This document shows positions 3,388 through 58,323 of a stretch of DNA of 64,000 nt, piece by piece. The stretch comes from Ruditapes philippinarum. Its lineage: Eukaryota. Both the position numbers and the translations under genes were made by a program. Positions within the stretch are counted from its first letter, which is position 1. Each line of letters begins with the position of its first letter. Under the pieces are notes generated by a model. It had not been told where the DNA came from, made no database searches, and worked only from the letters and a program-made list of their open reading frames with translations. The stretch covers positions 1 through 64,000 of the forward strand of contig NW_026863863.1 of the NCBI RefSeq assembly GCF_026571515.1, read 5' to 3'.

Positions 3388-4699
3388 ATCATGTCAAAAT
3401 GTCGATTTTTTGCCTGATTTGATACAGAAATATAAAGATGATGGAACACTTGTAGAATTAAATGATGATTTGAATAGAAGGATGGAAAAAATAAAATCTG
3501 TACTAAAAGAATACACTGCCCACGCCCTCAAACTTAAAACCAGAAGAACGACGTGCATGAAACGTTTAGAGATGTTTGAAAAATCTATCATAGAGTGTGT
3601 TAAAAGTGTTGTAGCCAAGGCCGAGACAGATATCGAAAGCAGATTAGCACCTGAAATTTGCAGTGCGCAAGAATATATCCAAAGGTATAATGAGCTACTG
3701 TCAAGGCTAGCTTGTATGTCAGCAAGTTGTGTAAATGAAAACAATGATATCGCTGAATATAAGAAAGTATTAGAAGGTAAACGTATGCTAAATGAGATAC
3801 ATATCGAATCTTGTGTGTTCGATGACAAATTGACAACTGACTGTAAGTTTCAAAATGAAATCATGGAGGCCATTTACAGATCTCTTAATGAAGGCCGATT
3901 ATATGGTACTTTAGCGATCAGAGATTCTGGAAATTGCTTTAATGTTCCAAATATATGCGTGAAAGAAGACGACGCTTCTCTCTTAATTTTATCAACTGAC
4001 TACAATAACAGGAACATAATACGCGTTGATACCTGTTTACAAGACATGGGAAGTTTGACAGTAGAAGGATTCGTTTGGGGACTTTGTGAGATCAATAAAC
4101 ATGATATTGCCTTTACTTTGACAGACTTGAAAAAGGTTCAATTTATGTCTTCTGATGCATGTCAAGCAAAAACTAGCTTCCATACACGTATACCCTGTCG
4201 TGGTATCGCATGTCTTAATGAAAAGATTTATGTTACAGGTGGTGGAATGATTGGAGAAGAGCAAGGGCAATTAAATGTGTTTGATTTGAAAGGAAAAATA
4301 CTCTGTAAGTACCATCAAGATTTGAATGGAAACTATTTCAGTATTCCACGAAGCATTATAGTAAATGGCGAAGGAACATTCATCACAGATAAAAACAACG
4401 GTGTCATTTGTTTAGATTTGGAAGGACAGCGGAAGTGGGTGTCAAACACATCAAAATGCAAATTTCCATGGGGAATTTGCTTCACGCCAAATGGGAATCT
4501 TTTTGTTTCTGGTCATTTGTCAAACAATATTGTGATTGTAAGTAAAAATGGGGAATTTCTAGGTGAACTGTTAAACAAAAATGACGGTCTATCAGCACCA
4601 CAGGGTCTCGGCATTGACAAACGGAATAACTGCATTGTAGTCTCTGAATATAAGAAGCCACATCTGAAGATGTTTTACATTGGCGATTGTGATATATGA
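3388..4699 (+). CDS. TRIM-like B-box/coiled-coil/NHL beta-propeller gene, copy A1: terminal exon (exon 2); B-box exon 1 not in window
   Basis: Acceptor tttttctctttcag|ATCATGT at 3387/3388 is equivalent to the paralogs' exon-2 start (xSCQ...). Open frame to TGA at 4699. Helical N-terminal part, then NHL-type repeats (CRGIA, IPRSIIV, FPWGICFTPNGNLFV, APQGLGID). The ORF start at 3329 is intronic. Confidence 0.85.
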
Positions 4700-6683
4700 T
4701 ATTAAACCTGTGGATGCCAGTAAAAGGTAAAAAGTATACTATGATTAGAATGTGTGCGATTTAACAATTTGACAAGTTGATTTATAACAAGGAAGCACTG
4801 GACGTTCATTTGTTAAAAGGGAGCAGGATATATGAAAAGCTTTTAAGTACATTTGTATGATGTAACTGCATATTTTGGGGCGTATGGGTAATATTTAGAT
4901 GGTTATGTTTACTATTATAATCCATTTGCAGAATTTGTAAATAGTAATCTATATATTGACAAAACTAAATGAAGAAGTAAGAATTTATTAATGCACACTT
5001 ATATACCGGTTTTGCTTTCTGATTACAAAGCTTTTAAGTATTTTATAACCATATCCGGGCCAGAAAAAAATACTTAATTGGTATTCTTAAAAGTTAGTGA
5101 CTCTATTTCATACCTGCTATGCAAAGTATTTCTGTAAATGATTGCTATTTTCCACGACTGAATCTATATTTTCCTGGCGTTTTTAAAGGAACCTTTTGTA
5201 TACAGGATCCACTTCAAATTTTTCCAAGATGTCAGTTTGATGACGGACTTAATTTTATGGTAACGGATATGAAAAAAACCGTTTATTCTTTCTATAATTC
5301 AAATGAATATAATTATGTAGTAATAAAGAAAGAAAAAAATTGTAAATGTTATTTTGCCCGTTACTAATCTTATATTCTTCAACATTAGATTATGCATGGA
5401 GTCCGTTTTCGTTAGCATTTGCTAGTTAAAAATGTTGAAATCTATGTAAAATGCTTTAAATCTTTAAGTTTTCCAAAAAAAAAAATCTGTCAACAACACA
5501 AGTTTTTATCAATATACATAATTATCGAATCTGTGTTATACATGTAAATTCATATTAGATCTTAACATATTTTTTGTGGTTACATTAACTTTTATATATA
5601 AAAGTATGCAAACAAATTTGGAACTTTACAGTTTCAAGCAAAGCCATAAAAATACATTTACATTAAGATATACATTGCTCATCCTTGAGTAAAATATTTA
5701 AAGGCCCATTTTTTCCTCGGAAATGCTATCAGAAATGCTATTATTTTATTTCTCAAAAACTGTTGGTTTTTGGTATCTGGTTACAGTCTCCAAAAATATT
5801 CTAATGTACTACATACATGAACTATATTTTGCATCTTTAGCTCTGTTGGCAATTGGTATAATTATAGTGAATTAGCATTTTGTATGGAAGTAAAAATACA
5901 ACTTTGTTTACATTTACCTACCTTTATAACTGCGTTCAGCGCATGAAATATGATTTGACATTTCTGAAGACTTAAAAAGATATAGAGTTCTGAGGCAATC
6001 ACAGAAATGTATAGGAATCTATGAAATTTTTACTGAATATGTCTAATTTGAATAAAAGAATGAATAAACTAGGTATTTGAAACTTCGTTTCTATTAAAAG
6101 TCAAATTAAGTTCGTATTGTCTAAAATTAACACACTATGATCATTTTTTTTTAACAGAACGGATCTCTTTATTTCTTTCCCAGGGTACATGACAATACAC
6201 CAAGGGGATATACTATAAACAGATTCAATATGACAAACAAACTTCCGATAACACTTTATCAGCCGATGAATTGTGTTTTGATTCAAAAGAGCATGAGGAT
6301 TCAGTAATTTTGTGGGAATCCTTCAACTAAGATTTGATACGCACATTATTCATCTGATGATATAGTTAAATATAATCTATATAAGTATCAAGAAAAGACT
6401 AAACTTTTTTATTGACATATCATGGAAAAGAAACCTTAAAGTTAATGTGTTCAAATCATTACTATGTTATTGTATGTTATGAAAAGGAAATGAACAATAG
6501 CACACTTTAGTGTCTCCATTAACATTTTTATGCTAGTTATCCTTTGAAAAAATTAAATGTACAGTAATACATAAACACATGCATATAAATAGTATATTAT
6601 ACATAAGACACAATTTTTAATATGATCAGCAAGATATATAGAGACTTTTTAGTATAAATCATACTAGTGTACTTAACAAAATT

Positions 6684-6700
6684 AGAGAGAGAGAGAGAGA
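6684..6700. repeat. (GA)n microsatellite
   Basis: agagagagagagagaga. Confidence 0.8.
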
Positions 6701-6956: not shown

Positions 6957-8097
6957 ATATATCGAGGGTATTTGTTTGTTTGTGTGTAAGATGAAATTTT
7001 ATTTCATCGAGTGAGCTTTAAAAAACAGTATTCTCACGAGTGGCGTAGCCACGAGTGAGAATACTGTTTTTAAAGTTCACGAGATGAAATAAAATTACAT
7101 CTTACACAACAAACAAACATATTTTCTTTTTTATTTTATGCTTAAAAACAAGTTAAAACGAAATTTCCTTGATATCAACTTTAATATTGAAATCTGTTTT
7201 CCCCATTGGTAGCCTCTCTATTAGTCGAATTTCTCATAAAATACAAGAAGTCTTGGGCTGAAAAATAAGTTTGCCAATCAACGTTAAATGGCGATGATAT
7301 TATTCATTTTATTCAAATAATATGAAAGATCGCTTGTATTAGTAATAAAAACAAACAATTCTAGTAGGAGAGAAAGTCCAACCATCCATCCATATTTCTG
7401 TTACTTACGGCGAATTTATATTAGACTTGGCTCTGTGTAATGTAAGCGGCAGCCATTTTTAAAAATTGTTTATTTCATGGGAGGAAAAAAATTGTGCTTT
7501 ATTCAGAGGAATATCATTTGGATTTGTTAGTCATACATCTTTTAAAAGAAAGAAAACTTTTTTGAGGATTGTTACAGACAATTAATAAGTGTTGACAGAT
7601 GTGTAAACATTCAAAAAACGACTAGGAAATTGGAACACATGGACTTTTTGAAACGGGCCTTTCAAACTTACGAACGTTGGGTTATTTACTTATTCTTCGG
7701 GCAGATGTCTGTCAATGCTTTTCAAGTTATAAGTAGGATACTTAAATATGCCCAAATGTCATCAAGAGCAGTTCTGCATGTGGAAGGAATTGTATTTTTC
7801 AGACAAAAATTTATAGACGATATTTGGTGATTGGTAATTTGAATGAATTGAAGTAAGTTTTCTTCTTTTTATTACTTTTGAAATTTCAGTTATTTATCAA
7901 TTTCTCTAAACAGCCCTGACAATGTCAGAATTGTCAACAATAATATAATTGAGGTACCGCATGGGGAAAATCTTAAAAAAGTTATCTCATCTTTGAAAAG
8001 TGTGAAATTATATTTTGATAATTTTCACTGTGAGATTATCAAATATAATTTTCACGGATAAATCAGTAATCCACTGAAAAGCATAAAATAAATATTT
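6957..8097 (+). mobile_element. Non-autonomous hairpin-ended element (~150-bp terminal fold-back plus subterminal inverted repeats)
   Basis: Palindrome ~6970-7122 centred on cacgagtggcgtagccacgagtg. Inner IR pair ttttattttatgc (~7129-7141) / gcataaaataaat (8081-8093). Both ends are shared with the inverted copy at 53222-53682. Confidence 0.7.
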
Positions 8098-14408: not shown

Positions 14409-16985
14409 ATGAAGAACACTGCGCGTGTATTCGGCACCTTTTTGGTCACTGCTATCATATTTGTACAGGCAATCAACGAATGTACAATTGATGATTATAA
14501 AACCTCAAAAAAGAACTATAAAATGAATTGTAGAAATTTGAATTTGACTGAGGTTCCAAGATTCTACCCAAAATTAGATAGGCCTATACATGAAAAAGTT
14601 TGTATGCTTGATTTGAGTTTAAATTCATTTTCTCTCCTCAAAAATGGCACGTTTCTACATATGATTAATTTGAGAATTTCAACGATTCGAGAGCTCAATT
14701 TAAGTTACTCGAACATTCGGTACATATCAACGGAAGCATTTCAAGGTTTGAAAAATTTACAATACCTAAATCTATCAGGAAACTCTCTTTCGTACCCGAA
14801 TGGATTTGGTAAAGGTGTTTTTAAATTTTTGAACAAACTTAGATTGCTAAATATCAAAGATAACAAATTTGTTACATACGATGGCTTTGGTAGAGAGATG
14901 GAATATTTACAAAATTTAAAAGGATTTTATGCTGAACTTTGCCTCAACTGCACATTTGGTAAAGAATTTGAAAAACTTAAGAATTTGAAAAAAATGAGTT
15001 TATCTGGCAGCTCAACTGGTGCATGCAATGCTTCAAAACTTCACAACTACACCTTTGAAGGTCTAACTAGGCTGAAGGTGCTCTGGCTGTCATCATGTAA
15101 TATTACTACAATAGAACCAGATGCATTCAAGCCAATGAACAAAAGTTTAACCCACCTTGATTTATCTTACAACGAGAACCTTCGTTTTCTTGGAATGAAC
15201 AAAGGTTTACATGGATTACGTTTCTCGCCAACTTTATCGATTTTAAATATTAACCGAATTCATAACATGTACCAACAGTGCGTGAAGTTAAAGGTGTCTC
15301 ACCTGCAGAACCTTATAACGCTGAGAAATTTGACGAAACTTTTCATGGATCTTAATAACATAGAAACCATTGCTAAAAAAGTGTTTTATCCTGCAAGTAT
15401 ATTTCCTTCGTCACTCCGGGTTCTAGCAATTGCAGGGAATAGAATTTCTTTTGACAACCATATCAGTTTTATTCACACCGCTACCAGTATCACATGCCTA
15501 GACATATCAAGACAACATCTATCTTACGATCCTTTTATAGGCAAAAACTCTGAAATGCAGGTACTAGATAAAAAATCAGGTATTGCAGACGATATTTGTT
15601 TTACAAAATTGAAAAGTGTTCAACCTTATCCACATGACAAAAGTTGCTCTATTAATTTGCCTCCTAATTTACGTCGTTTAAACTGGAAAAAGAGTTTCCT
15701 TAATTTCTATTTCGACGTTGATATTTTTATATGTGGAGCAAAAAAACTTCAATTTTTAGATCTTTCATTCAATCTCTTCACTGAATGGAGAAGTTCGATA
15801 AAAGGTCTGGAAAATCTTAAACAACTAGACCTTTCGAAAAATGACTGCGGTGAGATATCTCCAAATTTTTTTGACCATTTTACAGACTTACAAAAATTGA
15901 ATTTAGAAGGAAATAGGCTAGGAATCTCGTTGGGGCAGCCATTATCAAATCGGACTAATCGAATATTCAAAAGTTTGAAACAGTTATCATATCTTGATTT
16001 GTCACATAACAGAATTGACTGTTTTGCTGATCCTGACATATTCAAAGAGCTAACCAATATTCAGCATTTATATTTGCATTCGAACCGTTTGAGTGATTGG
16101 AACTTTGATCTACCGGAAAGCCAATTTCTCAGACTCATAGATTTATCGCAAAATAAACTTTCACATTTTTCTAAACAAATGAAAAATCAGCTTAATAAAG
16201 TATGCGAAGAGGGTACTTGCAATATAACTATGGTATTGTTAAACAATTCCTTTGAATGTGACTGTGAAAATTTACCATTTTTTTATTGGATGTTGTCTAC
16301 CAAAGTGCATATTAAAATTGATACATGTTTATTGAACTCAGAAAAGAAAAATATATCGACGACTACTGATTTACAGAGTTTAGTAGACACTTTAACAAGG
16401 GATATTTGTAACGATAAAACCTGGATCACATGGACCGTTGGAACTGTTTGTGTAGTGTTTGGAGGTCTATCTAGTATTATAACTGCATTAGTGGTTTATA
16501 GATATCGTTGGAAACTAAGATACATATATTACAGACGAAATAGAAGATTTAAGCACGAGGGATTCGAACGTCTTTTTGAGAACGACGCGTTCGTGTCTTA
16601 TGCAAAGAGCAATGCGAGTTTTATTAAACGCTACATGGTTCCTTCTCTCGAGGAGGAGCGCGGTCTTCGCCTTTGGGTGGCAGACAGGAATTCAATGCCC
16701 GGTACATCTATAGCCGAAAATATCAGTCGGAAGGCTGTTCTACTCATGGACAAGGCATACCTCAATGATAGTTGGTGTAACTATGAAATGAACATGGCAC
16801 ATGTTGAATCAACCGAAACAAAGAGAAAAATGATCATCATTGTGTTAATGGAAGACATTCCATCAAATAAATTGCCTATTTGTATAATGAGATTTCTACA
16901 AAGTGAACGGTCCCTTGAATACCCAAAAAATGATCAAGACTTTGACACATTTTGGACTGATCTTACTGAACAGATTATGAATTGA
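14409..16985 (+). CDS. TLR: Toll-like receptor (single cysteine-cluster type), 858 aa, intronless CDS
   Basis: Signal peptide, LRR-NT (C...C..LNLTEVP), many LxxLxLxxN repeats, LRR-CT (NNSFECDC), TM helix (WITWTVGTVCVVFGGLSSIITALVVY), basic RYRWKLRY, and a TIR domain (DAFVSY, DRNSMPG, SWCNYE, LEYP, FW). A splice acceptor ttttcttttatattgcag at 14395 implies a 5'-UTR intron. Confidence 0.96.
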   Translation: MKNTARVFGTFLVTAIIFVQAINECTIDDYKTSKKNYKMNCRNLNLTEVPRFYPKLDRPIHEKVCMLDLSLNSFSLLKNGTFLHMINLRISTIRELNLSYSNIRYISTEAFQGLKNLQYLNLSGNSLSYPNGFGKGVFKFLNKLRLLNIKDNKFVTYDGFGREMEYLQNLKGFYAELCLNCTFGKEFEKLKNLKKMSLSGSSTGACNASKLHNYTFEGLTRLKVLWLSSCNITTIEPDAFKPMNKSLTHLDLSYNENLRFLGMNKGLHGLRFSPTLSILNINRIHNMYQQCVKLKVSHLQNLITLRNLTKLFMDLNNIETIAKKVFYPASIFPSSLRVLAIAGNRISFDNHISFIHTATSITCLDISRQHLSYDPFIGKNSEMQVLDKKSGIADDICFTKLKSVQPYPHDKSCSINLPPNLRRLNWKKSFLNFYFDVDIFICGAKKLQFLDLSFNLFTEWRSSIKGLENLKQLDLSKNDCGEISPNFFDHFTDLQKLNLEGNRLGISLGQPLSNRTNRIFKSLKQLSYLDLSHNRIDCFADPDIFKELTNIQHLYLHSNRLSDWNFDLPESQFLRLIDLSQNKLSHFSKQMKNQLNKVCEEGTCNITMVLLNNSFECDCENLPFFYWMLSTKVHIKIDTCLLNSEKKNISTTTDLQSLVDTLTRDICNDKTWITWTVGTVCVVFGGLSSIITALVVYRYRWKLRYIYYRRNRRFKHEGFERLFENDAFVSYAKSNASFIKRYMVPSLEEERGLRLWVADRNSMPGTSIAENISRKAVLLMDKAYLNDSWCNYEMNMAHVESTETKRKMIIIVLMEDIPSNKLPICIMRFLQSERSLEYPKNDQDFDTFWTDLTEQIMN

Positions 16986-17901: not shown

Positions 17902-18523
17902 CCCATTACTTCATATACACGCCTTTTAACGCCTTTTTCACCCCCCCCCCCTTTTTTGTTGTCTCAAATGATGAAAAAATGCCTTATTTAGGCCCCAAAC
18001 ACTTGTTTTTGTTTGAGAAATGTTGTTAAAAAAGTGACCTCTTTTTCGGCGCGGCCCCCATCCAAAAGATACATCAGGGGGTTGCCAGAAGGGGGATGTG
18101 CCCCCTTCTGTTTGGTGGGTTTGAAGGGGGGGCGGAGTCCCCCTCATCGCCAAGAAAATTTTGGACTTGTGAGAGGCTGTAAATGACCCCAGATTGATCA
18201 TAAGGTAACGTGTAACCAACGCTGAAAAGCATTTGACTTTATCTCAATCCATTGAGAAGTTGCAGCACTTTGAAATCAATTTTGATGGAAAAATCAACGC
18301 AAAATAGTGATTTTTGGCAATTTTGAGATGTCCCCTCGTTGCCATGGTAACAGAAAATTTAAGCCTGAGCATGTTGTTGCAAGGGCAATGGTCCAGTCAA
18401 CATTTGTGCCAAGTTTGATTAGTGTTGAAGCAGTTTTTATAGTATTATAGCAAATTGAACTTGTAACAGGAGACTTTTCAATGAAAACAGCCATTTTTCA
18501 CAAAATGCTCATGAAGTAATGGG
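17902..18523 (+). mobile_element. piggyBac-like MITE, copy 1 (TTAA TSD, 13-bp TIR CCCATTACTTCAT)
   Basis: TTAA|cccattacttcat ... atgaagtaatggg|TTAA. CCC/GGG termini with TTAA are typical of the piggyBac superfamily. Confidence 0.85.
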
Positions 18524-18527
18524 TTAA

Positions 18528-22225: not shown

Positions 22226-22228
22226 GAT

Positions 22229-32832: not shown

Positions 32833-34153
32833 TTATATATTAAAGTTACATATTTCGCCATCATCAAAGTAAAATATCTTCAAATGACGCATTGTTGATT
32901 CTGCGACTAGAAGGCGACTGTTCTGTTTGTCAATGCAAATAGCTTTCGGTGCTGCAATGGCGTCATTTTTGTTTAAAAGGTCACCAATGTATTTTCCATC
33001 CTTACTTACTACCACAATGTTGTTAGAATCGCGTCCAGAAATTAGAAGATTTCCATTCGTCGTAAAACAAATTCCCCAAGGAAAAGTAAGTTTTGAGATG
33101 AGACATTTCCACTTCCACCTTCCTTCAAAATCGAGACAAACAGCACCACCGTCTTTACAATCTGTGACATAAATGGCATTAGCCTCAACTAACAAGCTTC
33201 TCGGGGCAAAAAAATGGTTGCCATCTAAATCATCCTGAAACTTGCGAAGATGAATGCCCTTTATGTTAAATATATTTACTTGTCCTTGTTCTTCTCCGTC
33301 AAATCCACCACCAGCCGTATATATTTTTTGCTCAAAAAAGGCAATTCCACGACAATGAAATTTAGCATTGAAACTACCTTTAGAAACAGGGTCTTTATTA
33401 AAGCCTACAAGTTCAATTGTCATTAAAGAAGGCATAGTAAATGCTATCGTATGTTTTTGAATTGCACAAACCCCCCAAATAAAACACCGTGTGTCATAGG
33501 TCATATTCTCAGTTAAGTCACTATCTAATAATTTGATTTTTCGTCCATGAAAATCTGCTATACAAACTTTACCACCTTCTAATACACACATATTTGGGAT
33601 ATCAAATTTGGTGTCAGTGCCACCAAAGACATTTATAGCATCGAAACTACACTGATCTGTCAGAAAGGAAGAAAGAGTTTTCACAACTTTGTCAACGTAT
33701 TTGTTATCATGTGTCATTTTGCAATCATCATTGTTGATTTGAATTTCTCTTAAAGCACGCTTGCAATGTAAGGCCTTCTTATACTCCAGCATTGCATTGT
33801 TTTCATTCATCAAGTCTTCTGAGAGCATACTGAATTTTAACAGTTCTTCTTTTGCTGCATCCATAAGTTTTTGTGTACTGCAAATATGTGGTTCGAGTGA
33901 ATTTTCTATATCCTCCTCAGCTTCAGTCACAGCAGTTTCGATCAATTCAGTTATTGATTCTTTTAACACTTTTAGTCGCCTTATGTTTGTCTTCTTTCTC
34001 ATTCTGAGCTGGGCGCCATGAATAGCATGTTTTTCATACGATAGTTTTAACGTTTTTATTTTACTTTTTAAATCTTCATCTAAAATTGCAAGTCCTCCCT
34101 CCTCTTTAAATGTACTTGCAACATCCGGTAAATAACCGATATCTTGACATGAT
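32833..34153 (-). CDS. TRIM-like B-box/CC/NHL gene, copy B2, exon 2 (join 36087..35768,34153..32833; 546 aa)
   Basis: Acceptor cttattacag|ATCATGTCAA. Frame open from 34153 (SCQDIGYLPDVAST...) into ORF 32833-34002. NHL-type repeats (CRGIA, APRSL, FPWGIC, APKAICID). Confidence 0.92.
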
Positions 34154-35767
34154 CTGTAATAAGATATATATGCTTAAGTTATTGTTAACCTTGGACATAA
34201 TGTAACGGGACAAACAACTGGAAATTAGCGCACGCTATAAATTGGCCAAATTTGACGCCTATACAGCCATTTTGTCTTTTTGGTCGTTGTAAATGGTACT
34301 ATTATGCTTCTGGTAGTGTGAGCATATAGACACCATCTTGTCCGCATAATAATATGAAAAAGGATTTTAGGAATTTGATTAAAACTATACACAGTGAAAG
34401 AGACGATCGAGATGACGTGCAATGTTTAAAAACCATAACTCTACCTTACGCTGTTTTTGAATAAGCTTCATTAAGTTTAAAATGCTTGTCCGGAGTATCA
34501 TTTCTTAATTATAAATGGTATGTTAATGAAACTAGACACACATTATAGGACAAGAACGAGAGTACGCAGTTTCATATTACCATGGCCTATAGCTTAGTTA
34601 TTGAATAATGTCCCTTTACAAATTTTAATACAGTTTACTTAATGATGATTAATCGGAGTAAAGCTTAAATGTATTGAAGGATTTTGATCAGGATTTTACA
34701 AAGTAATAGATACAAGTGAAAGGAATTGCAGTGTTAATAAACCTTCATTCTAGTTCGCTTGTTATTTTAAGTATCTCCTTTTATGATATTTACAAATGCT
34801 TGTCCGAAGAATAACTTGAAAAATAGTGAAGGAATTTGATAACAACTTCACACAGTGATAGAGATTAGTAAGAGGAATTGCATTTCACCTAACCACCTTG
34901 CTTATTTTCTTTTTGATTATTTCTTAAAAATTAATAATACTTGTCTGGAGTAAAACCTCTAATTTAATTTTATTGAAATGTCACACAGTTATAGAGACTA
35001 TGTGTTATGGAACAATAACTCTACATAACTTTGTTTTTCACTTATGTGAAAATATGAAAATTGGCCTTCTTGGGCTCTCATAGTGAAAATCAAACATGGC
35101 TGACTAAGTAGGACAAAGTCAGTTATCTCTTGACAAAAGATTAAGGTTATACATGTAATGTTATCCCCAATTTTCATATAGATCTATAGACAAAGCTCAC
35201 AATGATAAATGATAACAATTTGAAAAAAAAATAATCTAAAAGCTATGCATTTAGTACTAATATATATAATATATACCGTTAGCTATTTAAAACTAAAATT
35301 TAAATAAAAAGAATATTTATATCGAAAGTGCTAAATGTATAAAGACGGAGTACATTGTTTTGTTAGGTTTATGCACATTTCATGAATGGCAAAATCCAGT
35401 TTGAAGAATGGTGTAGTGCAAACAGACACAGACTATTTTTTTTTAATTATTTACATTAAAACTATATTGTTTTCATAAACATATGACCGATTCTCGAAAG
35501 GGTTGAAACATAGAATGTCTACGTCATTTTACACACATGAACATTGTATGTAAACATTAATATGTTCCAAAACAAAATATTACATTGCTATTTTACGTAG
35601 GATTTTATCCATTTAGCAGTGATTTCAGGTATTTGCCATTCGTTTTTTATTATATAATTTGATACCATATTCTTTTATACAAGCATTTTCAAAGTATTTT
35701 TGTTATGAAATTTAAACAATAATTTTTGCAGTAGATATAAAGTTTTATAACCTTTAAATGAACTTAC

Positions 35768-36087
35768 TTGTGATCTTTTGCTATGCAAACACGACAGCAG
35801 ACGACATTATGATCACCACATACCATATCCTCCTCCTTGTCGGTGTGAAGTTCACATTTACTTAAACATATCGGTATGTGCTCTTTTGAAACTTCCTCAC
35901 ATTTTACTAATGTATGTCCTTTAGTTAAACCAAATTTCTCATGATGGGCCAGACATGTTGAGCAAAAGTACTCGCCACATTCTAAACAAAATCTCTTGGC
36001 TTCCACAAACCTTTCCTGTTGAGAACAAGGCGTACAATTGTAATCATGAGCTTCTTCGGACGATAAAATTTGTCCACACGTCGCCAT
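35768..36087 (-). CDS. TRIM-like gene copy B2, exon 1 (B-box1 + B-box2, no RING)
   Basis: aaaATGgcg start. CxxC...CxxCxxxxCxxC..H...H and CxxH...CxxH..CCxxC..H motifs. Donor CACAA|gtaagt is phase 2 and in frame with exon 2. Confidence 0.92.
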
Positions 36088-36164
36088 TTTGTTTGCTAAC
36101 ATGTTAAGTTGTGCATAATAGTAACCGTAGATAAAAGCGGACTATTGATTTTGTAACACGCGTT

Positions 36165-36179
36165 TTATGGCACGCCACA
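36165..36179 (-). promoter_or_regulatory. Conserved upstream 15-mer shared by all three B-box first exons (also 44317-44331 and 58406-58420)
   Basis: Identical ttatggcacgccaca (+ strand) 30-83 nt upstream of each ATG. Function is inferred only. Confidence 0.4.
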
Positions 36180-37897
36180 ATTGTTTACATACAGGACACT
36201 CTAAATCTCCGTCACAAACGATTTTCATTTGATCAGTGATGTTGTGCAATCTTTTAATGACATGTTGTATCTTGAAAAAAGAAAACATTATCTTTACCAG
36301 ATAAAAGTAATAACAAAAATAAAAAAATATTGCAAGATAATTTGTCTATATCTAACTTAAATGAAAGTAGAAATGAGCATTTGTTAATAATGAACTAATT
36401 TAATTTCAAATGTCTATGTTGGATACGTAAGTTTCAAGAAAAGATTTTGAAATGAAAAGAGGACAAAATGATTTCATACAATCTACTTTTTAGTTCGATA
36501 ACCGCACGGAGAATTCCTTCCCAATCTCAGGTCGCTGATCATGTGAAGGTAATTTGCGTTTTAGTTTTGAGTTATTTTGCACTGGCCATCAAAACGATCT
36601 TATTTTGTAATGAATTAGTGTTTATATCAACATTTTTCTAAAGACACATTTTTGGTATCAAGGGTATATTTTCTTTTTGAAATCTAATAGAAGAGGCACT
36701 GGTACAAAATTAATGTCATTTGACTATGTACATTTTGAAAAACTTTGTTCAATAAAATAACATAGGGACACTTTTTAATAATACAATTATTTCATTGTTT
36801 CATATTAATTGTTTGACGGGAAGAGTGATTAAGCCCTTGTATTTTGGGGTTCGGTTTTTTATTGTTTTTTATTGAATGAAAAGTTAAATGTGCAGCTGGA
36901 AAATTTAAAAAGGGATACTTTTTTAAAACCAAAAACACAAAAATGAATAACTGATTTTGAAACTTTTTGTAAACTCGTCAAAAAAGTAACAGTTTTCCCG
37001 GACGATGCGGGTCACTTGAAAGATTATGAAATCTTTTCTTCCGTCATTTGCACTGTACCGTGTTTGGTTTTAACAAGTTTGTGCGTTCCTTGCGGAGATG
37101 GGGTTTCCTGTCCTGGAAATGTTGCCACCTGTGGGGTTCTTATGAATTTAAGTAAAGAGGATGCTTTTAACTATTTTAATTCAAAATTTTACGAAATAAT
37201 GAAATTTAAACAAAAAGGGAAACAAAAATAAAACTAAAAAATCCCCTGCAAATTTTTTTGGAATGATTTAAAAACTTTCCCCTTCCCCTTGAAAAAAGCA
37301 AAAAAACATTTTGAAAAACTTTATGCAAAAACGAAAAAATCAAAACTTGAAAATTTTTTTGAAATTTTGATATAAAATTTTTAATCTAAAGGTAGATATG
37401 CCATTGATAGAAATTGTTTATGGCTTTGAAATTATACATAATATATAAAAAGAGAGCTAGATATATTTATTATAAATCGATCAATTATTGAATTGAAATT
37501 ATAAATACATTTATTTGTAAACTGCATTCATAGAATTTGATTGTGCCATATAGGCACATGTAGCCGAATGTTTTTGTACCAGTCTAGACATTTTTGTAAA
37601 TGTTGTTACAGTTTATACGATACGAACTTTTAATCACATTGCTGTATTAACTATTGATACAAGCATATTTAGTAATACATATACATGTACATAGTAGTTG
37701 CATGATAATTGATTTGTAACGTGATAACATCTTTGTACTCTTTTTGCTGCCTTATTAAATACACACGTATATTAGAGAATGAACAAGAACATTGTATTCT
37801 AACAAATATACATTTTCACTCGAAAGAAGAAAAAGAAAAAATATACATCAATACAATTTTTACTGGGTACACAAAGGGACATCTTAAACTGTCTCGG

Positions 37898-38090
37898 AGT
37901 GGCGGCGTGGTCGAGTTGTTAATGCAGTAATCTAAGGACAGTTGGCCTCGTGAGTAAAAACCCCACCAAGGGCAACACACTGTTTCCGTGAGCAAGAAAC
38001 TTTACACTCATTGCTGGTTGTGATCCAGGAACGGATTCGAGAGTGTTGTAACAACATTATACCGGTAGCTTCCAAATCAATCGAACTAAA
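37898..38090 (+). mobile_element. Degenerate tRNA-derived SINE with CORE-like central domain
   Basis: A-box-like gtggtcgagttgt, decayed B-box, and tgtttccgtgagcaagaaactttacactcattgct resembling a CORE domain. Confidence 0.6.
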
Positions 38091-38859: not shown

Positions 38860-40177
38860 TCATATATCACATTCACCAATGTAAAATATCTTCAGTTGTG
38901 GTTTCTTATATTCCGAGACTATAATGCAGTTGTTCCGTTTATCAAAGCAGATAGCCTTTGGGGCTGAAAGACCGTCATGTTCGTTTAACAGTTCACCTAA
39001 AAATTCACCATCTTTACTAACAATCACAATATTGTTTGAATCACGTCCACAAACAAAAAGATTCCCATTTGGCGTGAAGCAAATTCCCCAAGGAAATTTG
39101 CATAACGTGTTGTTACACACCCACTTCCTCTGTGCTTCCAAATCTAAACAAATGACGCCGTTTTGTTCGTCTGTGATGAATATTCCTTCGGTATTTACTA
39201 CAACGCTTCGTGGAATGCTGAAAAAGATTCCCTGAAAATCTTGACAAATGCAGAGTAACTGCCCTTCCAAATCAAACACATTTAATTGCCCTTTATCTTC
39301 TCCTTTCATCCCACCACCAGTCACGTAAATCTTTTCATTAAAACATGCAATACCACGACAATGTAAATTTGCTATGAAGCTTCTTTTTAAAACTGGACCC
39401 TTATCAGTTGATATCAATTGAACTTTCTTCAAGCCAGACAAAGTAAATGCAATTTCGTGTTTGTTTATCTCACAAATCCCCCAGATGTTTCCTTCTACAT
39501 TAAAACTTTCAGTTTCTTTTAAATCACTGTCAATACATCTGATTTTGTGGTTGCTATAGTCAGCTAAGAAAACAAAAGAAGAACTTTCACATTCTTTAAC
39601 ACATAAACTTGGGGGACCAAAACTGTTTCCAGGACCACCAATCGATATAGTTCCAAACAATAACCCATTTCCTAAACAGCTTACAACTGACTGTATAATT
39701 TCATTTTGAAACTTGTTGTCAATTATTAAGCAGTCATTGACAACGGACGCACAAGATTCAACTTCAATTTTCTTAAGTGCCCGTTTACATTCTAATATCT
39801 TTTTAAATTCCAGAATATCATCATTTTCCTCTAATAACTCCTCTGACAGACCGCTGAGTTTTGAAAGCATATTGTTATAGTTCTGGGTGTGTTCTTGCAA
39901 GTCGCAAATTTCAGGTTCAAATCGGCTTTCGACATTTTTCTCAGTCTCGGTGATAGCATTTTTAACACACTCGTCAATAGATTGACCTAGCATTTCTAAA
40001 CGTTTCAAATACGTTATTTTTCTTGTTTTTAGCTTTAAGACTCTAGCAGAGTATTCTTTGTGTGCTGTTCTCAATTCCTCGATTTTATCTTTCATTTCCT
40101 TCTCTACCACTACGCACTTTTCGTCTTCCTTATACTTCTTCATCAAATGCGGCAGATAATCAATGTTTTGACATGAC
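38860..40177 (-). CDS. TRIM-like B-box/CC/NHL gene, copy A3, exon 2 (join 44287..43968,40177..38860; 545 aa)
   Basis: Acceptor ttttgatttaag|GTCATGTCAA, in frame (SCQNIDYLPHLMKKYKED). Clear paralog of A1, including a similar 3' flank. Confidence 0.9.
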
Positions 40178-43208: not shown

Positions 43209-43967
43209 AGGTTATGGAAAAACTAATACTGTAACAGTATTGTGATCGTAGCTTATTGGGCGGAGCGTCATGCACTCATGAAAAAACACCGGTAAACTCC
43301 GTACTTTTTATTGCTTTGTGTTTTCCCATACAATGCATGTTTGAACTATATAGAATATCTCGACAATAACGGTATTGTAAACATCCCATTTAAAGTTAGA
43401 ATATGGATGTAATTTGGTAAAAAGGCAAGGGCATTTTTTCACGTATGTTTTCAAATAAACACATGTAAAAAGCCATATGCAAACGTGCGCATATCTATAA
43501 ATTTATATCGATATTTACATTTCAAGATTTATACAAGTCCAATAACAAGAAAAAACACGAGAAAAAACAAAACAAAAAAACAACACGAATTACTTAATCA
43601 CGCTTCCAACCTATAAATTAAGACAAGTGAATGCCATAATGACAGAGATAAATTTCAGTTCGTCAATGACACAAAAACAATGACAGTTTAACATGTCTGG
43701 GATTTTGACATCGAAAGCCCTCCATATGTGTGATCATATAATTATGTTTTGTTAATATGTAAACAAAGGCGCAAGTTATCATCCTACGACAGTAACTCAA
43801 ATCACGGTAATAATCGCAATATTTAAGCATTAGTTTGTTTTTAATATGTTCATTTTTACAGTTCTAGATCTTTAGAAGATTTTAAAATTGTATGTGCATT
43901 TTTTAGGTAAAATCCTTTAAACCTGTGCAAGTTTATAATAAAAGTCAAAATATTTTAGAACATTTAC

Positions 43968-44287
43968 CTATGACATGTAGTTATGCAAACACGACAGCAG
44001 ACGACATCATGATCACTGCAGACCATATCCTCCTCCTTGTCGGTGTGAAGTTCACATTTACTCAGACGTGCTGGAACTTGATCTTTTGAAACTTCCTCAC
44101 ACTTTATAAGAGTATGTCCTTTAGTAACACCAAACTTCTCATGATAGGCCAGACATGTTGAGCAAAAATACTCGCCACATTCTACACAAAATCTCTTGGC
44201 TTCCAAAAACCGTTCTTGTTGAGAACAAGGCGTACAATTGTAATCATAAGCTTCTTCGGACGACAAAATGTTTCCACACGTCGCCAT
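43968..44287 (-). CDS. TRIM-like gene copy A3, exon 1 (B-box1 + B-box2)
   Basis: aaaATGgcg start, two B-box motifs, donor CATAG|gtaaat (phase 2). Confidence 0.9.
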
Positions 44288-48870: not shown

Positions 48871-49471
48871 TAAAAATATATATGTCTTTGCTTAGCTTTG
48901 AAAATACATGTATATATGAGTGTATTGAATATACAATTTTTCCTATTCTAATACCCGACTTAATAAAATAAATAACTTTATCTTATCATAAATCGATCAA
49001 GAATTTGAAATTGACTTGGTATTACTAAGCATTCAATTGTGAAACTGTACTGTATGCATAGAATTTGAAAATGACACATATATGCCGATGTTTCCGGGTG
49101 TGTTTCCCCTATATTGACATGTTTGTATATGTTTAGTTGTATATACCACATGACATTTAGATAAAAATTATTTAATGAATTGTTGATACCAAGACATATA
49201 AATGCCTTATCAAAGCCGTGATAGTTGTATAATTATTGATTTGTAACATACTTCCATCGGTGTACTTTTTTGTATTATTACCGTAAGTGTCACGTGTTGT
49301 GTTTACTACTTGTCGTATGTATATTTTTCATTTTTTCTGCTAAAAAAATAATATGCAGAATCATCATATCAGGTTTATTCATTTTATTACTTTTAACTGA
49401 GGCGGGGTTAAGTTGGGAGCTATATTCTTTCTCATAAATCTATTAACAACTCACCAATCAAATCATTTATG

Positions 49472-49984
49472 TTTTTACTTACAATCACAATATTGTTTGA
49501 ATCACGTCTACAAACTAAACAATTCCCATTTGAAGCAAATTCCCAATGGAAATTTGCATATAGTGTTGTTGCACACCCACTTTTGCTGTCTTTCCAAATC
49601 TAAACCAATGACACCGTTTTGTTCATCTGTGATGAATATCCCTTCGGTATTTACTATCACGCTTCGTGGAATACTGAAATAGTTTCCATCCAAATCTTGA
49701 TCATATTTACTGTGTAGTTTTCCTTTCAAATCAAAAACATTTAATTGTTCTTTGCTCTTCTCCTTGCATCCCGTCACCAGTCACATAAATCTTTTTATTA
49801 AAACATGCGATGCCACGACAATGTATCCGTGTATGGAAGTTTTTTTAAGCTTGGTGTGCATCAGTTGATATAAATTGCACTTTCTTCCATCCTTCTATTC
49901 AAATCCTCATTTAATTCTACAAGTGTTCCATCTTCTTTATATTTCTGTATCAAATCAGGTAAAAAATCGATATTTTGACATGAT
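49472..49984 (-). pseudogene. Pseudogenic exon 2 of the TRIM-like A subfamily (internal ~640-bp deletion, frameshifts, 3' truncation)
   Basis: Intact acceptor ttccctttcag|ATCATGT. Matches A1 3388-~3487, jumps to A1 ~4130, and ends at IVIVSK. The upstream intron (to ~52950) is an inverted homolog of ~2000-3387. Confidence 0.9.
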
Positions 49985-50049
49985 CTGAAAGGGAAAAATA
50001 TACTGCTTTGTCCGTTGCAAATTTAATCATATTACAATGGAGCATCTGT

Positions 50050-53221: not shown

Positions 53222-53682
53222 TATTTATATTTAATATTCATTTTTATTACATGCTTTTCGGTGGTTTATAGAAATATATCAGTGAAATAAAAACTGTTAA
53301 TTTCACTGTTTTAAACAGTGAAATTATCAATTTGATAATTTCACTGTTTTGAATATTGAGCCCATTACGTTGTTTCAGTGGTGAAATAGAAGCGTTCACA
53401 GTACTGGAAACCAACTTAATGACGTGGCATTGTAAATGACGTCACGTTATATTATTATTTGGCGTTAATTATTAGGTTAATATGTCTTTTTAAACGTTTC
53501 TTTGCATATAATAAAAAGAAAATTTGTTTAGTTTAATGTAAGATCGAAATATATTTCACCTCGTGAACACCAAAAGTTCATATTTCACTCGTGGCTGCGC
53601 CACTCGTGAAATATACCTTTTGGTGCTCACTCGGTGAAATATATTCCGATCTTTCACTGAACTAAACAAATATCCTCTATAT
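53222..53682 (-). mobile_element. Hairpin-ended element, same family as 6957-8097, shorter interior
   Basis: Fold-back 53521-53672 centred on cactcgtggctgcgccactcgtg. The opposite end resembles the reverse complement of 7995-8097. Confidence 0.7.
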
Positions 53683-54239
53683 AATCAATATTTTTACTTA
53701 CCTCTGGTGATTCTCTACGTTTTTTAGAGACTCAAAACCCGATTATATCCGGTGTACGGTGTATAGTTAGTAGCACTCAGGGGTGTCACGGCTAGCAAAA
53801 CTACTTACTGTTTAAACGGTTAACCGGTTGTACATAAATAATGCTTAGACTTGATAAGTTACTAACCTTGGTTGCCAGATATTGAAATATTTCTAACCGG
53901 GTTTTGGCCCAAAACCGACCGAACCTTTTAAACGAATAAACGTCAGACCTCTACAGAAGTATCACAGCAGAATAATCGTTAATTCTTACACTCCTCGTGA
54001 TTTTGTGACTGTACAAAGAAGAAAAAAGCCGGTGTTAAACTGCCAATAAACACTGGCTAGGGACTACATGTATATGCGTCTTTTATTTTTTCTCCCTGTA
54101 TATTATAGTTAACAAATTCTTGTAACACAACAATAATAAGACAATTTCATTGACATTTTCCGTTATTACAATGTTTTACAACGAAGTTAATACCATTATG
54201 TCTAGGTAAGACTTATTAACACACTTTGATCTCATATTC

Positions 54240-55088: not shown

Positions 55089-56391
55089 TCATATTTCGCA
55101 AAAATTTGAGTTAAATATCTCTAGATAAGGCTTCTTTGATCCAAAGACCAAAAGGCGGCTGTTTTCATTGTCAATGGCAATTGCCTGTGGTGTTGAAATA
55201 TTGTCATCCTTGTTTAGAATTTCACCCAAGAACTCTCCATTTTTACTAACAACCACAATGTTGTCTGAGCCGCGTCCAGAAATTAAAAGATTCCCGTTTG
55301 TGGTAAGACAAATTCCCCACGGGAAAGTAAATCTTGTGGTCTTTAAAATCCATTTCCAGACACCATCAAAATCTAAACAGACGACACTATTTTTTTGACA
55401 ATCCGTGACAAAGATGTTGTTGGTGTTTACAGTCAAACTTCTCGGAGCACAGAAACGGTTACCATTTGATTTCATCTCAAATTTTGTAAGATGATTTCCC
55501 TCTATATCAAATATATTAATTTGTCCAGGCTCTTCTTTGAGAAAACCACCACCAGCCATATATAAATTATTCTCGAAAAAGGCAATACCACGACAATGAA
55601 ATTTCGCAGAGAAACTACTTTTAAACACTGGATTCTTGGTAAATTCTACCATTTCAACTGTCATTAAAGAAGGCATAGTAAATGCTATCATATGTTTGTC
55701 TATGGCACATACCCCCCAAATAAGACATCTTGTGTCATAGGTCATATCCTCATTTAGGTCATTATCCAATAATTTGATTTTTCGTCCATGATAATCTGCT
55801 ATACAAACATAACCACCTTCTAATACACACATATTTGGGATATCGAATTCGGTGTCAGTGCTAGATACTTTTATAGCACCGAAGCTACACTGATCTGTCA
55901 GAAAGGAAGAAAGAGTTTTCACAACTTTGTCAACGTATTTGTTATCATGTGTCATTTTGCAATCATCATTGTTACTTTGAATTTCTCTTAAAGCACGCTT
56001 GCAATGTAAGGCTTTCTTATACTCCAGCATTGCATTGTTTTCATTTATTAAGTCTTCTGAGAGAATACTGAGTTTTAACAGTTCTTCTTTCGCTGCCTCC
56101 GTAAGTTTTTGTGTACTGCAAATATGTGGTTCGAGTGAATTTTCAATATCCTCCTCAGCTTCAGTCACAGCAGTTTCGATCAATTCAGTTATTGATTCTT
56201 TGAATACTTTTAGTCGCCTTATGTTTGTCTTCTTTCTCATTCTGAGCTGGGCGCCATGAATAGCATGTTTTTCATACGAGAGTTTTAACGTTTTCATTCT
56301 ACTTTTTAAATCTTCATCTAAAATTTCAAGTCCTCCCTCCTCTTTAAATGTACTTGCGACGTCCGGTAAATAACCGATATCTTGACATGAT
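55089..56391 (-). CDS. TRIM-like B-box/CC/NHL gene, copy B4, exon 2 (join 58323..58016,56391..55089; 536 aa)
   Basis: Acceptor cttattacag|ATCATGTCAA, in frame with ORF 55089-56297. Closest paralog of B2. Confidence 0.92.
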
Positions 56392-58015
56392 CTGTAATAA
56401 GATATATATGCTTAAGTTATTGTCAACCTTGGACATAATGTGGCGGGACAAACAACTAGAAATAAGCGCGCGCTGCGTTATATATTGGCCAAATTTGACG
56501 CCCATACAGCCATTTTGTCTTTTTGGTCGTTGTAAAATGGTACTATTATGCGTCTGGTAGAGGAGCATATAGTCACCATCTTGTCCGGATAATAATTTGA
56601 AAAGTATTTTAAGAATTTGATTAAAACTTCACACAGTGAAAAAGAGACGATCGAGAAGACGTGCAGTGTTTAAAATACATAAGTCTACTTTGCTCTGTTT
56701 TTGAATTAGCTTCATTAAGTTAAAATGCTTGTCCGGAGTATCATTTCTAGATTATAAATGGTATGTTAATGAAACTAGACACAAACTATAGAGAGAAGAA
56801 CGAGAGTACGCAGTTTCACATAACCATAACCTATAGCTTAGTTATTGAATTATGTCCCTTTAAAAATTATAATACTTAATGATGATTAACCGGAGAAAAG
56901 CTTGAAAAAGTATTGAAGGATTTTGATTAGGACTTTACAAAGTAATTGATACATGCAGTGTTAATGAACCTTAATTCTAATTTGCTTGTTATTTTAAGCA
57001 TCTCCTTTTATGATATTTACAAATGCTTGCCCGAAGAATAGTGAAGGAATTTGATAACAACTTCACACAGTGATAGAGATTAGTAAGAGGAAATACACTG
57101 CACCTAACCACCTTGTTATTTTCTTTTTAATTATTTCTTTTTAAAATACATTACTTGAACATTTGAATAATACTTGTCTGGACTAAAACATCTGTTAACA
57201 ATTATCAATTTAATTTTATTGAAATGTCACACAGTTATAGAGACTATTCAGAGTAAGTGCAGTGTTATGGAACAATAACTCTACATAACTTTGTTTTTCA
57301 CTTATGTGAAAATATGAAAATTGGCCTACTTTCACTTTGGGCTCTCATAGTGAAAATCAAACATGCAGGCTGACTTTGCGGATCACCTTAAAGTAGGACA
57401 AAGTCAGTTATCTCTTGACAAAAGATTAAGGTTTTAACGTTATCCCCAATTTTCATATATAGACAAAGCTCACAATGATAAAAGAAAAAAACATTCCAAA
57501 GGCTATGCATTAAGTACTAATATATACCGTTAGTTATGTAAAACTAAAATTTCAATAAAAAAGAATATTTATATCGAACGTGCTAAATGTATAAAGACGG
57601 AGTACATTGTATTGTTAGGTTTATGCACATTTCATGAATGGCAAAATCCAGTTTGAAGAATGGTGTAGTGCAAACAGATGCAGACTAATGTTTTTAAATT
57701 ATTTACATTAAAACTATATTGTTTTCATTAACTTATGGCCGATTCTCGAAAGGGTTGAAACATAAAATGTCTACGTCAATTTACACACATGGACATTAAA
57801 CATAACAATATGTTACAGAACAAAATATTACAATGCTATCTTACGTAGGATTTTATCCATTTAGCAGTGATTTCAGGTAGTTGCCATTCGCTTTTGATTA
57901 TATAATTTGATACCATATTCTTTTATACAAGCATTTTCAAAGTATTTTTGTTATGAAATTTAAACAATAATTTTGCAGTAGATATTAAGTTTTATAATCT
58001 TTAAATGTGACTTAC

Positions 58016-58323
58016 TTGTGGTCTTTTGCTAGGCAAACACGACAGCAGACGACATCGTGATCACCACAGACCATATCCTCCTCCTTGTCAGTGTGCAAGT
58101 CACATTTACTTAAACATGTCGGTACAGACTCTTTTGAAACTTCCTCACATTTAACTAGTGTATGTCCTTTAGTTAAACCAAATTTCTCATGATGGGCCAA
58201 ACATGTTGAGCAGAAGTACTCGCCACATTCAACACAAAATCTTTTGGCTTCCACAAACCTTTCCTGTTGAGTACAAGGCGTACAATTGTAATCATAAGCT
58301 TCCTCGGACGAACACGTCGCCAT
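58016..58323 (-). CDS. TRIM-like gene copy B4, exon 1 (B-box1 + B-box2)
   Basis: aaaATGgcg start, two B-boxes, donor CACAA|gtaagt (phase 2). Has a 4-aa N-terminal deletion relative to B2 and A3. Confidence 0.92.

What the first reader, a model, noticed from the sequence alone, without database searches (positions are those of the whole stretch)
3388..58323. Putative diversifying immune locus: a TLR embedded in a cluster of RING-less B-box/CC/NHL genes with a constant first exon and a hypervariable propeller exon
Seen: five family members surround one TLR. By hand count, exon 1 differs at only 18 of 107 residues between A3 and B2, although their exon 2 proteins belong to clearly different subfamilies. 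Exon 2 is diverged across copies, yet four copies keep intact frames of 430+ codons. Known: B-box/coiled-coil modules drive TRIM oligomerisation, NHL propellers bind RNA or protein ligands, and TRIM-like and TLR families are expanded in bivalves. Inference: a conserved assembly module with variable sensing heads could form hetero-oligomeric cytosolic receptors. Lacking a RING, they would need a partner ligase. Linkage to the TLR may reflect co-regulation.
Basis: partly seen in the sequence, partly recalled or inferred. Interest (0 to 1): 0.8.

Follow-up and report, generated by a model that had tools for sequence, protein, structure and literature searches.

The report
Clam Brat-like B-box/NHL gene cluster
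This is a Manila clam cluster of expressed RING-less B-box/coiled-coil/NHL-propeller genes next to a Toll-like receptor, and its "constant first exon" comes from recent recombination between copies plus ordinary purifying selection, with no sign of a dedicated diversifying immune mechanism.

Summary
The window (Ruditapes philippinarum, first 64 kb of a 74-kb contig) holds three complete two-exon genes, one intact but orphan exon 2, one decayed fragment and one intact TLR. The count of 18 differences in 107 residues is exact. Exon 1 encodes tandem B-boxes. Exon 2 encodes a long coiled coil and a six-bladed NHL propeller. There is no RING, so the architecture is Brat-like. One gene is shown to be transcribed and spliced exactly as modelled.

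- dN/dS is 0.18 (exon 1) to 0.39 (coiled coil), and no region exceeds 1.
- Exon 1 looks constant mainly because its synonymous divergence is five-fold lower than that of exon 2 (0.33 against 1.76). It shares more recent ancestry through gene conversion or crossover.
- Mosaic tracts, a significant PHI test and a recombinant copy in another sample support this.
- The coiled coil, the supposed constant assembly module, is as variable as the propeller's top loops. Propeller blades 3-6 are well conserved in one subfamily.
- I found no sign that the TLR linkage recurs, but that test was shallow.

The scan has already noted similar arrays elsewhere in this genome. Verdict: an ordinary lineage-specific family evolving by birth-and-death and recombination. 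The immune role is untested.

The parts
950..3387 (+). Remnant intron of copy A. It is homologous to the introns of paralogs D3 and C5, and the homology ends at 950, so exon 1 is missing.
3388..4699 (+). Copy A: orphan but intact exon 2 (436 codons plus stop) encoding coiled coil and NHL propeller. A-type.
14409..16985 (+). Intronless Toll-like receptor ORF (858 aa): signal peptide, LRR ectodomain, transmembrane segment, TIR.
32833..34153 (-). B-type coiled coil and NHL propeller.
   Evidence: RNA contigs cover it and splice into it.
35768..36087 (-). Gene B1, exon 1: tandem B-box1 and B-box2. Phase-2 donor AA|GTAAGT. The last zinc ligand of B-box2 lies in exon 2.
   Evidence: The splice joint 35768|34153 is in three RNA runs.
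33500..36190 (-). Tract homogenised between B1 and B4 (91-98% nt identity). It spans about 100 nt of 5' flank, exon 1, the whole intron and the first ~650 nt of exon 2. The rest of exon 2 is 65-75% identical and the flanks cannot be aligned.
38860..40177 (-). Gene B2 (RefSeq LOC132723588), exon 2: 438 codons plus stop. A-type.
   Evidence: structure
43968..44287 (-). Gene B2, exon 1 (tandem B-boxes).
49444..50045 (-). psi: decayed A-type exon-2 fragment with an internal ~640-bp deletion and frame breaks. Intron remnant up to about 52794. No exon 1.
55089..56391 (-). Gene B4, exon 2: 433 codons plus stop. B-type.
58016..58323 (-). Gene B4, exon 1 (tandem B-boxes, with a 4-codon deletion near the N-terminus).

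Best explanation
This is a tandem, lineage-specific cluster of Brat-like (RING-less TRIM-like) genes of the Manila clam.

Gene and protein structure. Each complete gene has two coding exons. Exon 1 encodes B-box1 and B-box2. Exon 2 encodes a roughly 95-residue coiled-coil helix, a linker and a six-bladed NHL beta-propeller. At least gene B1 is transcribed and spliced as modelled.

Likely protein function (inferred from the TRIM architecture). The proteins probably form antiparallel coiled-coil dimers that present two NHL propellers to a ligand, either protein or RNA. They have no E3 ligase domain of their own.

How the cluster evolves. It evolves by birth-and-death: there are intact genes, a 5'-truncated copy and a pseudogene. 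It also undergoes repeated non-allelic recombination, either gene conversion or unequal crossover, helped by the shared two-exon layout. This exchange makes a mosaic in which different segments have very different ages.
- The promoter-proximal flank and exon 1 are shared recently between the two exon-2 subfamilies.
- The 5' 2.7 kb of B1 and B4 was homogenised recently.
- The C-terminal blades were homogenised among all A-type copies.

Why exon 1 looks constant. It coalesces more recently (low dS), and the zinc-binding B-boxes are about twice as constrained (omega 0.18 against 0.34). All regions are under net purifying selection. The neighbouring TLR is an intact gene with no demonstrated functional link.
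For: Architecture.
- Pfam finds B-box, NHL, LRR and TIR domains.
- The exon-1 profile hits KAP1 B-box1 (E=2.6e-6) and the tandem B-box region.
- The AlphaFold2 model has a helix at residues 21-116 and 24 strands, with propeller pLDDT of 80-92.
- The best Foldseek hits are the Brat, Thin, TRIM2 and TRIM71 NHL domains, with target-normalised TM-score (TMt) 0.69-0.77.
- RefSeq proteins of 544-547 aa equal exon 1 plus exon 2 exactly, so no RING exon exists.

Expression. The splice joint 34153|35768 is in contigs of three RNA-type runs from three studies. It is absent from a DNA run whose contig reads through into the intron.

Selection. Pairwise dN/dS is 0.11-0.82. ML omega is 0.18-0.39.

Mosaic history.
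- B1-B2: dS 0.33 in exon 1 against 1.76 in exon 2.
- B1-B4: dS 0.10 in the coiled coil against 0.84 in the C-terminal region.
- A-D1: dS 1.57 in the coiled coil against 0.23 in the C-terminal region.
- B1 against B4: 91-98% nt identity over exon 1, intron and the 5' half of exon 2, then 65-75%.
- The 5' flank and exon 1 of B1 are colinear with those of D1, while their introns and exon 2 are unrelated types.
- The PHI test gives p<=0.001 for exon 2 (z about -8) and for the A-type copies alone (z about -10).
- Region trees show radically different branch-length patterns.
- The exon-2 data reject the exon-1 grouping (AU p=0.0004).
- A protein from another data set (P0007) is B2-like up to residue 222 and D2-like from residue 226.

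Birth-and-death. A lacks exon 1 and psi is broken.
Against: - Exon-1 data alone do not reject the exon-2 topology (AU p=0.40). The case for exchange therefore rests on dS and branch-length heterogeneity, colinearity and the PHI test, without a resolved topological conflict.
- Top-face loops of the propeller have higher omega (0.39-0.73) than strands and bottom loops (Fisher p=0.01). Some positively selected sites could hide in the averages.
- No site models were run. There are only 8 sequences.
- Contig C6492 may be the other haplotype, not a paralogous array. Some of the 'paralog' exchange would then be allelic recombination.
- The biochemical function and ligand are pure inference.
Confidence: 0.7

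Rival explanations
1. This is a diversifying immune receptor locus. A constant B-box/assembly module is combined with propeller heads that are driven apart by positive selection. The heads form hetero-oligomeric cytosolic sensors that are co-regulated with the TLR.
For: - The family is hugely expanded: 1539 candidate B-box exons in the genome, and all 150 that were scored are significant.
- Top-face loops evolve faster at nonsynonymous sites than the rest of the propeller.
- In close pairs, coding sequence in the propeller is more diverged than the adjacent intron.
- TRIM2/3-like transcripts are associated with disease tolerance in oysters (PMC9892467).
- B-box families are expanded in bivalves (PMC8382680).
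Against: - Omega is below 1 in every region and structural class.
- Synonymous sites are elevated together with nonsynonymous ones in the diverged segments, which points to history and away from selection.
- Positions with 5 or more residue types are spread over top loops (6), bottom loops (4) and strands (6), with no surface clustering by class.
- The coiled coil is as variable as the top loops. Blades 3-6 are conserved.
- Exon 1 is not constant outside a five-gene group.
- Two of the closest TLR paralogs have no family gene in their 10-kb downstream flanks.
Confidence: 0.12
2. The two contigs are two very divergent haplotypes of one hyper-polymorphic locus with presence/absence variation. 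The overlap is C12350 32.8-74.2 kb with C6492 1-28.6 kb. Under this reading B2/D2, C5/D3 and B1/D1 are allelic pairs, and the recombination signal is largely ordinary allelic crossover.
For: - The overlap is a colinear dovetail at contig ends: D1-D2-D3 against B1-B2-(psi, B4)-C5, at 72-89% nt identity in BLAST segments.
- No third near-identical copy exists in the assembly.
- The recombinant P0007 has a single switch point, as expected of a crossover between alleles.
Against: - Non-coding divergence of 5-20% and dS of about 0.2 are far above usual allelic divergence.
- A and C5 lie on the same contig, so they are certainly paralogs, yet they are as similar to each other (intron 90-96%) as C5 is to D3 (93-97%).
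- The overlapping ends do not converge to high identity.
- RefSeq annotates them as separate loci.
Confidence: 0.15
3. There was no exchange at all. Exon 1 is conserved only because zinc-finger residues are under stronger purifying selection than the rest of the protein.
For: Omega for exon 1 (0.18) is about half that of exon 2 (0.34). Sixty-one of 106 exon-1 columns are invariant, including all Cys/His ligands.
Against: - Synonymous divergence differs five-fold between the exons of the same gene pair (0.33 against 1.76, z about 7). It differs in the opposite direction in other segments and pairs.
- Exon-1 synonymous sites are free to change: dS is 0.7-1.3 against C5/D3.
- Non-coding flanks and introns share the same tract boundaries.
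- The PHI test is significant.
Confidence: 0.03

Closest known systems
Brat / NCL-1 type TRIM-like proteins (TRIM subfamily C, class VII relatives without RING; Marin 2012, PMC3503706)
   Same: Same domain order: B-box1, B-box2, coiled coil, six-bladed NHL propeller, and no RING. The Brat NHL domain is the best structural match.
   Different: - Only 17-20% sequence identity in the propeller, and no orthology.
- A family of hundreds or more in the clam, against a single-copy developmental regulator.
- By a secondary-structure-based loop assignment, the top-face loops carry a near-neutral or negative net charge in most copies. This does not suggest the electropositive RNA-binding face of Brat and Lin-41. 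The inference is weak.
Canonical TRIM-NHL E3 ligases (TRIM2, TRIM3, TRIM32, TRIM71)
   Same: B-box, coiled coil and NHL propeller. The structural matches have target-normalised TM-score (TMt) 0.73-0.77.
   Different: No RING, so no intrinsic E3 activity. No filamin domain. Two B-boxes encoded on a separate first exon.
Fish finTRIM and primate TRIM5/TRIM22 clusters (expanded tandem TRIMs with a conserved RBCC and a positively selected B30.2 domain)
   Same: A tandem, lineage-specific expansion with an N-terminal zinc-finger module more conserved than the C-terminal ligand-binding domain. Recombination occurs among the tandem copies.
   Different: The C-terminal domain is NHL and not B30.2. No RING. 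No region with omega>1 was found here. The conserved/variable contrast is mainly a difference in age (dS).
Concerted evolution and gene conversion in tandem multigene families
   Same: Mosaic tracts with sharp identity boundaries that include introns and flanks, a significant PHI test, and recombinant copies in other individuals.
   Different: Nothing essential. This is the ordinary mechanism applied to a clam TRIM-like cluster.

Membership tests
TRIM (RBCC) family | N-terminal RING finger | tested here: not met
   The exon-1 ORF starts 17 residues before B-box1. RefSeq proteins (544-547 aa) equal exon 1 plus exon 2. Pfam finds no RING. RNA contigs end at the ATG region.
TRIM (RBCC) family | One or two B-box zinc fingers | tested here: met
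   Pfam zf-B_box and ANCHR-like_BBOX match at E 1e-5 to 1e-3, just below the gathering score. The exon-1 profile hits KAP1 B-box1 (E=2.6e-6) and the tandem B-box1-2 region, profile positions 12-106 (E=1.4e-4). All Cys/His ligands are invariant.
TRIM (RBCC) family | Long coiled coil after the B-boxes | tested here: met
   AlphaFold2 predicts a continuous helix at residues 21-116 of the exon-2 product, followed by helices 120-135 and 148-167. pLDDT is only 45-60 because the chain was modelled as a monomer. Dimerisation itself was not tested.
TRIM-NHL / Brat-like subfamily | C-terminal six-bladed NHL beta-propeller | tested here: met
   The model has 24 strands and pLDDT 80-92. Foldseek hits the Brat, Thin, TRIM2, TRIM71 and Mei-P26 NHL domains at E 1e-13 to 1e-10. 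The Pfam NHL repeat scores above its gathering score in three copies.
TRIM-NHL / Brat-like subfamily | RNA binding through an electropositive top face | tested here: inconclusive
   Net charge of the presumed top loops is -5 to +5 across copies. Loops were assigned from secondary structure alone, because no coordinates were available.
Diversifying immune receptor families (finTRIM/TRIM5-like behaviour) | dN/dS above 1 in the ligand-binding domain or surface | tested here: not met
   Omega is 0.27-0.39 by region and 0.39-0.73 in top loops. Site models were not run.
Diversifying immune receptor families (finTRIM/TRIM5-like behaviour) | Induction by infection or an immune phenotype | not tested
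   Run metadata are coded. Only presence and splicing in RNA contigs could be shown.
Toll-like receptor | LRR ectodomain, transmembrane segment and cytoplasmic TIR in one open frame | tested here: met
   Pfam LRR_8 (E=4e-42), TIR_2 (E=1.4e-10) and TIR (E=6.5e-6) match in an uninterrupted 858-aa ORF. The hydrophobic segment before the TIR was read directly from the sequence.

The most novel reading that the evidence does not exclude
Segment exchange between copies is itself the selected diversity generator of a very large cytosolic Brat-like recognition repertoire in clams. The exchange includes swaps of promoter plus exon 1, intragenic crossovers in the propeller such as the one seen in P0007, and patchwise conversion of blades. 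The repertoire would comprise hundreds to more than a thousand two-exon B-box/NHL genes. It would be maintained as highly divergent presence/absence haplotypes, with C12350 and C6492 as alleles in which the same array position carries different exon-2 subfamilies.
Probability: 0.15. Interest if true: 0.6.

Novelty: new member of a known kind. Interest (0 to 1): 0.3.

Why it matters
Bivalves have no adaptive immunity and have expanded many innate-immune-like families. RING-less B-box/NHL genes appear to be one of the largest such families in the Manila clam, yet RefSeq calls them 'uncharacterized'. This locus gives a clean, verified gene model: two exons, with the intron splitting B-box2 before its last zinc ligand. 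It also gives a worked example of how recombination between copies creates an apparent 'constant module, variable head' pattern without positive selection. That is a caution for reading similar arrays in this and other genomes. By itself the locus adds no new mechanism.

Tried and rejected
- Purifying selection alone as the cause of exon-1 constancy. Rejected by the dS heterogeneity.
- Strict topological incongruence between the exon-1 and exon-2 trees. The exon-1 protein data do not reject the exon-2 topology (p=0.40). Only the reverse test is significant. I therefore rely on dS, tract boundaries and the PHI test.
- A third B-type copy as donor for the diverged 3' half of B1 and B4. None exists in the assembly; the next best hit is 35% identical or less.
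- Flanks of more TLR paralogs. Only two 10-kb flanks were fetched, with no family hit.
- Haplotig test by DNA search of the C6492 unique flank. The result was swamped by an interspersed repeat and is uninformative.
- Literature on this specific family in bivalves. I found only general statements about B-box and TRIM expansion.
Exons were searched separately. Full-length RefSeq proteins returned by the homology search were scanned in its place.
Full report
**Labels.** I use my own labels throughout.
- A: exon 2 at 3388-4699 (+).
- B1: 32833-36087 (-).
- B2: 38860-44287 (-).
- psi: 49444-50045 (-).
- B4: 55089-58323 (-).
- C5 lies on the same contig just outside the window (exon 1 at 73347-73028, exon 2 at 70247-68924).
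- D1, D2 and D3 lie on a second contig, C6492.

**1. What is there.**

The window is the first 64 kb of a 74,203-bp contig of a 1.41-Gb genome. Homology hits identify the organism as the Manila clam, Ruditapes philippinarum.

ORF listing and tblastn confirm four intact exon-2 frames of 433-439 codons. They also show one fragment, three exon 1 copies and one 858-aa TLR ORF.

All complete genes share one structure.
- Exon 1 runs from ATGGCG to CA[C/T]-A[A/G]|GTAA.
- Exon 2 starts at AG|[A/G]TCATGTCAA.
- The intron is phase 2 and splits B-box2 just before its last zinc ligand.

RefSeq proteins of 544-547 aa match exon 1 plus exon 2 in length. For B2 (LOC132723588) and C5 (LOC132723589) I read the sequence and the match is exact.

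RNA evidence comes from contigs of three RNA-type runs from three studies. They join 35768 to 34153, which is exactly the predicted junction. A DNA run lacks this joint, and one of its contigs reads across the exon 2/intron boundary about 700 nt into the intron.

**2. Domains.**

The exon-1 profile hits KAP1/TRIM28 B-box1 (E=2.6e-6) and its tandem B-box1-B-box2 region. Pfam B-box matches are just under the gathering score. All Cys/His ligands are invariant.

AlphaFold2 on the exon-2 product of B2 gives a helix at residues 21-116 and two shorter helices. It also gives a 24-strand propeller with pLDDT 80-92. Foldseek ranks the Brat, Thin, TRIM2 and TRIM71 NHL domains first.

There is no RING. 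The architecture is therefore that of Brat or NCL-1, the TRIM-like members of TRIM subfamily C (PMC3503706).

The TLR has LRR and TIR domains in one frame.

**3. Cluster anatomy.**

A further complete gene, C5, lies on the same contig outside the window. Three more (D1, D2, D3) lie on contig C6492.

These seven are the only exon 1 copies above 75% identity in the genome. The next is 46% identical. The wider family has 1539 candidate B-box exons, and all 150 that were scored are significant. It also has about 700-1000 candidate NHL exons.

Copy A has lost exon 1. Its homology to D3 stops 64 nt downstream of the expected exon 1, at window position 950. psi has an internal deletion, frame breaks and no exon 1.

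**4. Selection.**

Pairwise Nei-Gojobori dN/dS is 0.11-0.39 in exon 1 and 0.15-0.82 in exon-2 segments.

One-ratio codon-model omega by region:

| Region | Omega |
|---|---|
| Exon 1 | 0.18 |
| Coiled coil | 0.39 |
| Middle region | 0.35 |
| C-terminal blades | 0.27 |

I also split the propeller by secondary-structure class. The face assignment (d-a and b-c loops on top) is inferred from propeller convention, because I had no coordinates.
- Top loops have omega 0.39-0.73.
- Strands have omega 0.21-0.39.
- Bottom loops have omega 0.14-0.28.
- The excess in top loops is significant (Fisher p=0.01) but stays below 1.

Highly variable columns are spread over all classes. Among A-type copies the coiled coil is the least conserved part (57%). 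Blades 3-6 are 78-88% identical.

**5. Why exon 1 looks constant.**

Synonymous divergence is strongly heterogeneous along the genes.

| Pair | Segment | dS | Segment | dS |
|---|---|---|---|---|
| B1-B2 | exon 1 | 0.33 | exon 2 | 1.76 |
| B1-D1 | exon 1 | 0.34 | exon 2 | 1.38 |
| B1-B4 | coiled coil | 0.10 | C-terminal region | 0.84 |
| A-D1 | coiled coil | 1.57 | C-terminal region | 0.23 |

Exon-1 synonymous sites are not intrinsically constrained. dS is 0.7-1.3 against C5 and D3.

Whole-gene nucleotide profiles show tracts with clear boundaries that include non-coding DNA.
- B1 and B4 are 91-98% identical from about 36190 through exon 1, the whole intron and the first ~650 nt of exon 2. Identity then drops to 65-75%, and the flanks cannot be aligned.
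- The 5' flank and exon 1 of B1 are colinear with those of D1, but their introns and exon 2 are of unrelated types.
- In the A/C5/D3 trio, introns are 93-98% identical while the propeller-coding part is 80-89% identical.

Other tests point the same way.
- The PHI test is significant for exon 2 (p<=0.001) and for the A-type copies alone.
- Region trees differ radically in branch-length pattern.
- The exon-2 data reject the exon-1 grouping (AU p=0.0004), but the exon-1 data do not reject the exon-2 topology (p=0.40).
- A protein from an independent data set (P0007) is B2-like at 44 of 47 informative sites up to residue 222. It is D2-like at 36 of 38 sites from residue 226.

Together these results show repeated recombination or gene conversion between copies. 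The 'constant exon 1' is a young segment plus a roughly two-fold stronger constraint.

**6. TLR linkage.**

The closest TLR paralogs (67-68% identity) sit in a TLR tandem array on another contig (C4907) and on C7804. The 10-kb downstream flanks of two of them hold no family gene.

The contigs that carry TLR paralogs do not overlap the top family hits. The one exception is a pair 190 kb apart.

Co-regulation remains untested.

**7. Open point.**

C6492 1-28.6 kb is colinear with C12350 32.8-74.2 kb at 72-89% identity in BLAST segments, in a dovetail arrangement at contig ends. This could be a segmental duplication or two extremely divergent haplotypes with presence/absence variation. I could not decide between them.

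**8. Context and verdict.**

B-box families are known to be expanded in bivalves (PMC8382680). TRIM2/3-like transcripts are associated with disease tolerance in oysters (PMC9892467). An immune role is therefore plausible by analogy, but it is untested here.

Earlier notes of this scan describe similar RING-less TRIM-NHL arrays elsewhere in this genome (s1-803846, s1-810581). I did not test their claims.

This is a new member of a known kind, of modest interest.

Noticed in passing
window 37819-38015 (core 37981-38015): A short element with extreme depth in every run laid: summed contig depth of about 25,000 in the DNA run, against 7-50 in most other bins. Hundreds of contigs run on into unlike sequence on both sides. 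It is a very high-copy interspersed repeat, possibly SINE-like.
   Followed up: no
window 17938-18219 and 18808-19086 (-): Two near-identical ORFs of 93 and 92 aa lie about 870 bp apart, just downstream of the TLR. They are probably two copies of a repeat or transposable element.
   Followed up: no
window 8630-9196 (-): A 188-aa ORF with no Pfam match. Its neighbourhood (6958-8092) is 86% identical to C6492 28957-30132 and 77% identical to window 53504-53683. It looks like a transposable-element remnant that travels with the A/D3-type duplication unit.
   Followed up: partly
whole genome G000: The two-exon B-box | coiled-coil-NHL layout is shared genome-wide. Open frames run about 110-145 aa around B-box hits and about 440-475 aa around NHL hits. 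Some NHL hits sit in open frames of about 600 aa (for example C8587, C4065 and C2731), which may be single-exon, possibly retrocopied, members.
   Followed up: no
window 41200-43500 (intron of B2): The B2 intron carries about 2.3 kb with no counterpart in the D2 intron. It is an insertion or deletion inside an otherwise 80-96% identical duplication unit.
   Followed up: no
window 36100-36830: The DNA run X1 has B1 exon 2 and part of the intron at about 99% identity. It has almost no contig coverage just upstream of exon 1, and one contig diverges at about 36094. This suggests structural variation between individuals at the same boundary as the B1/B4 homogenised tract.
   Followed up: no
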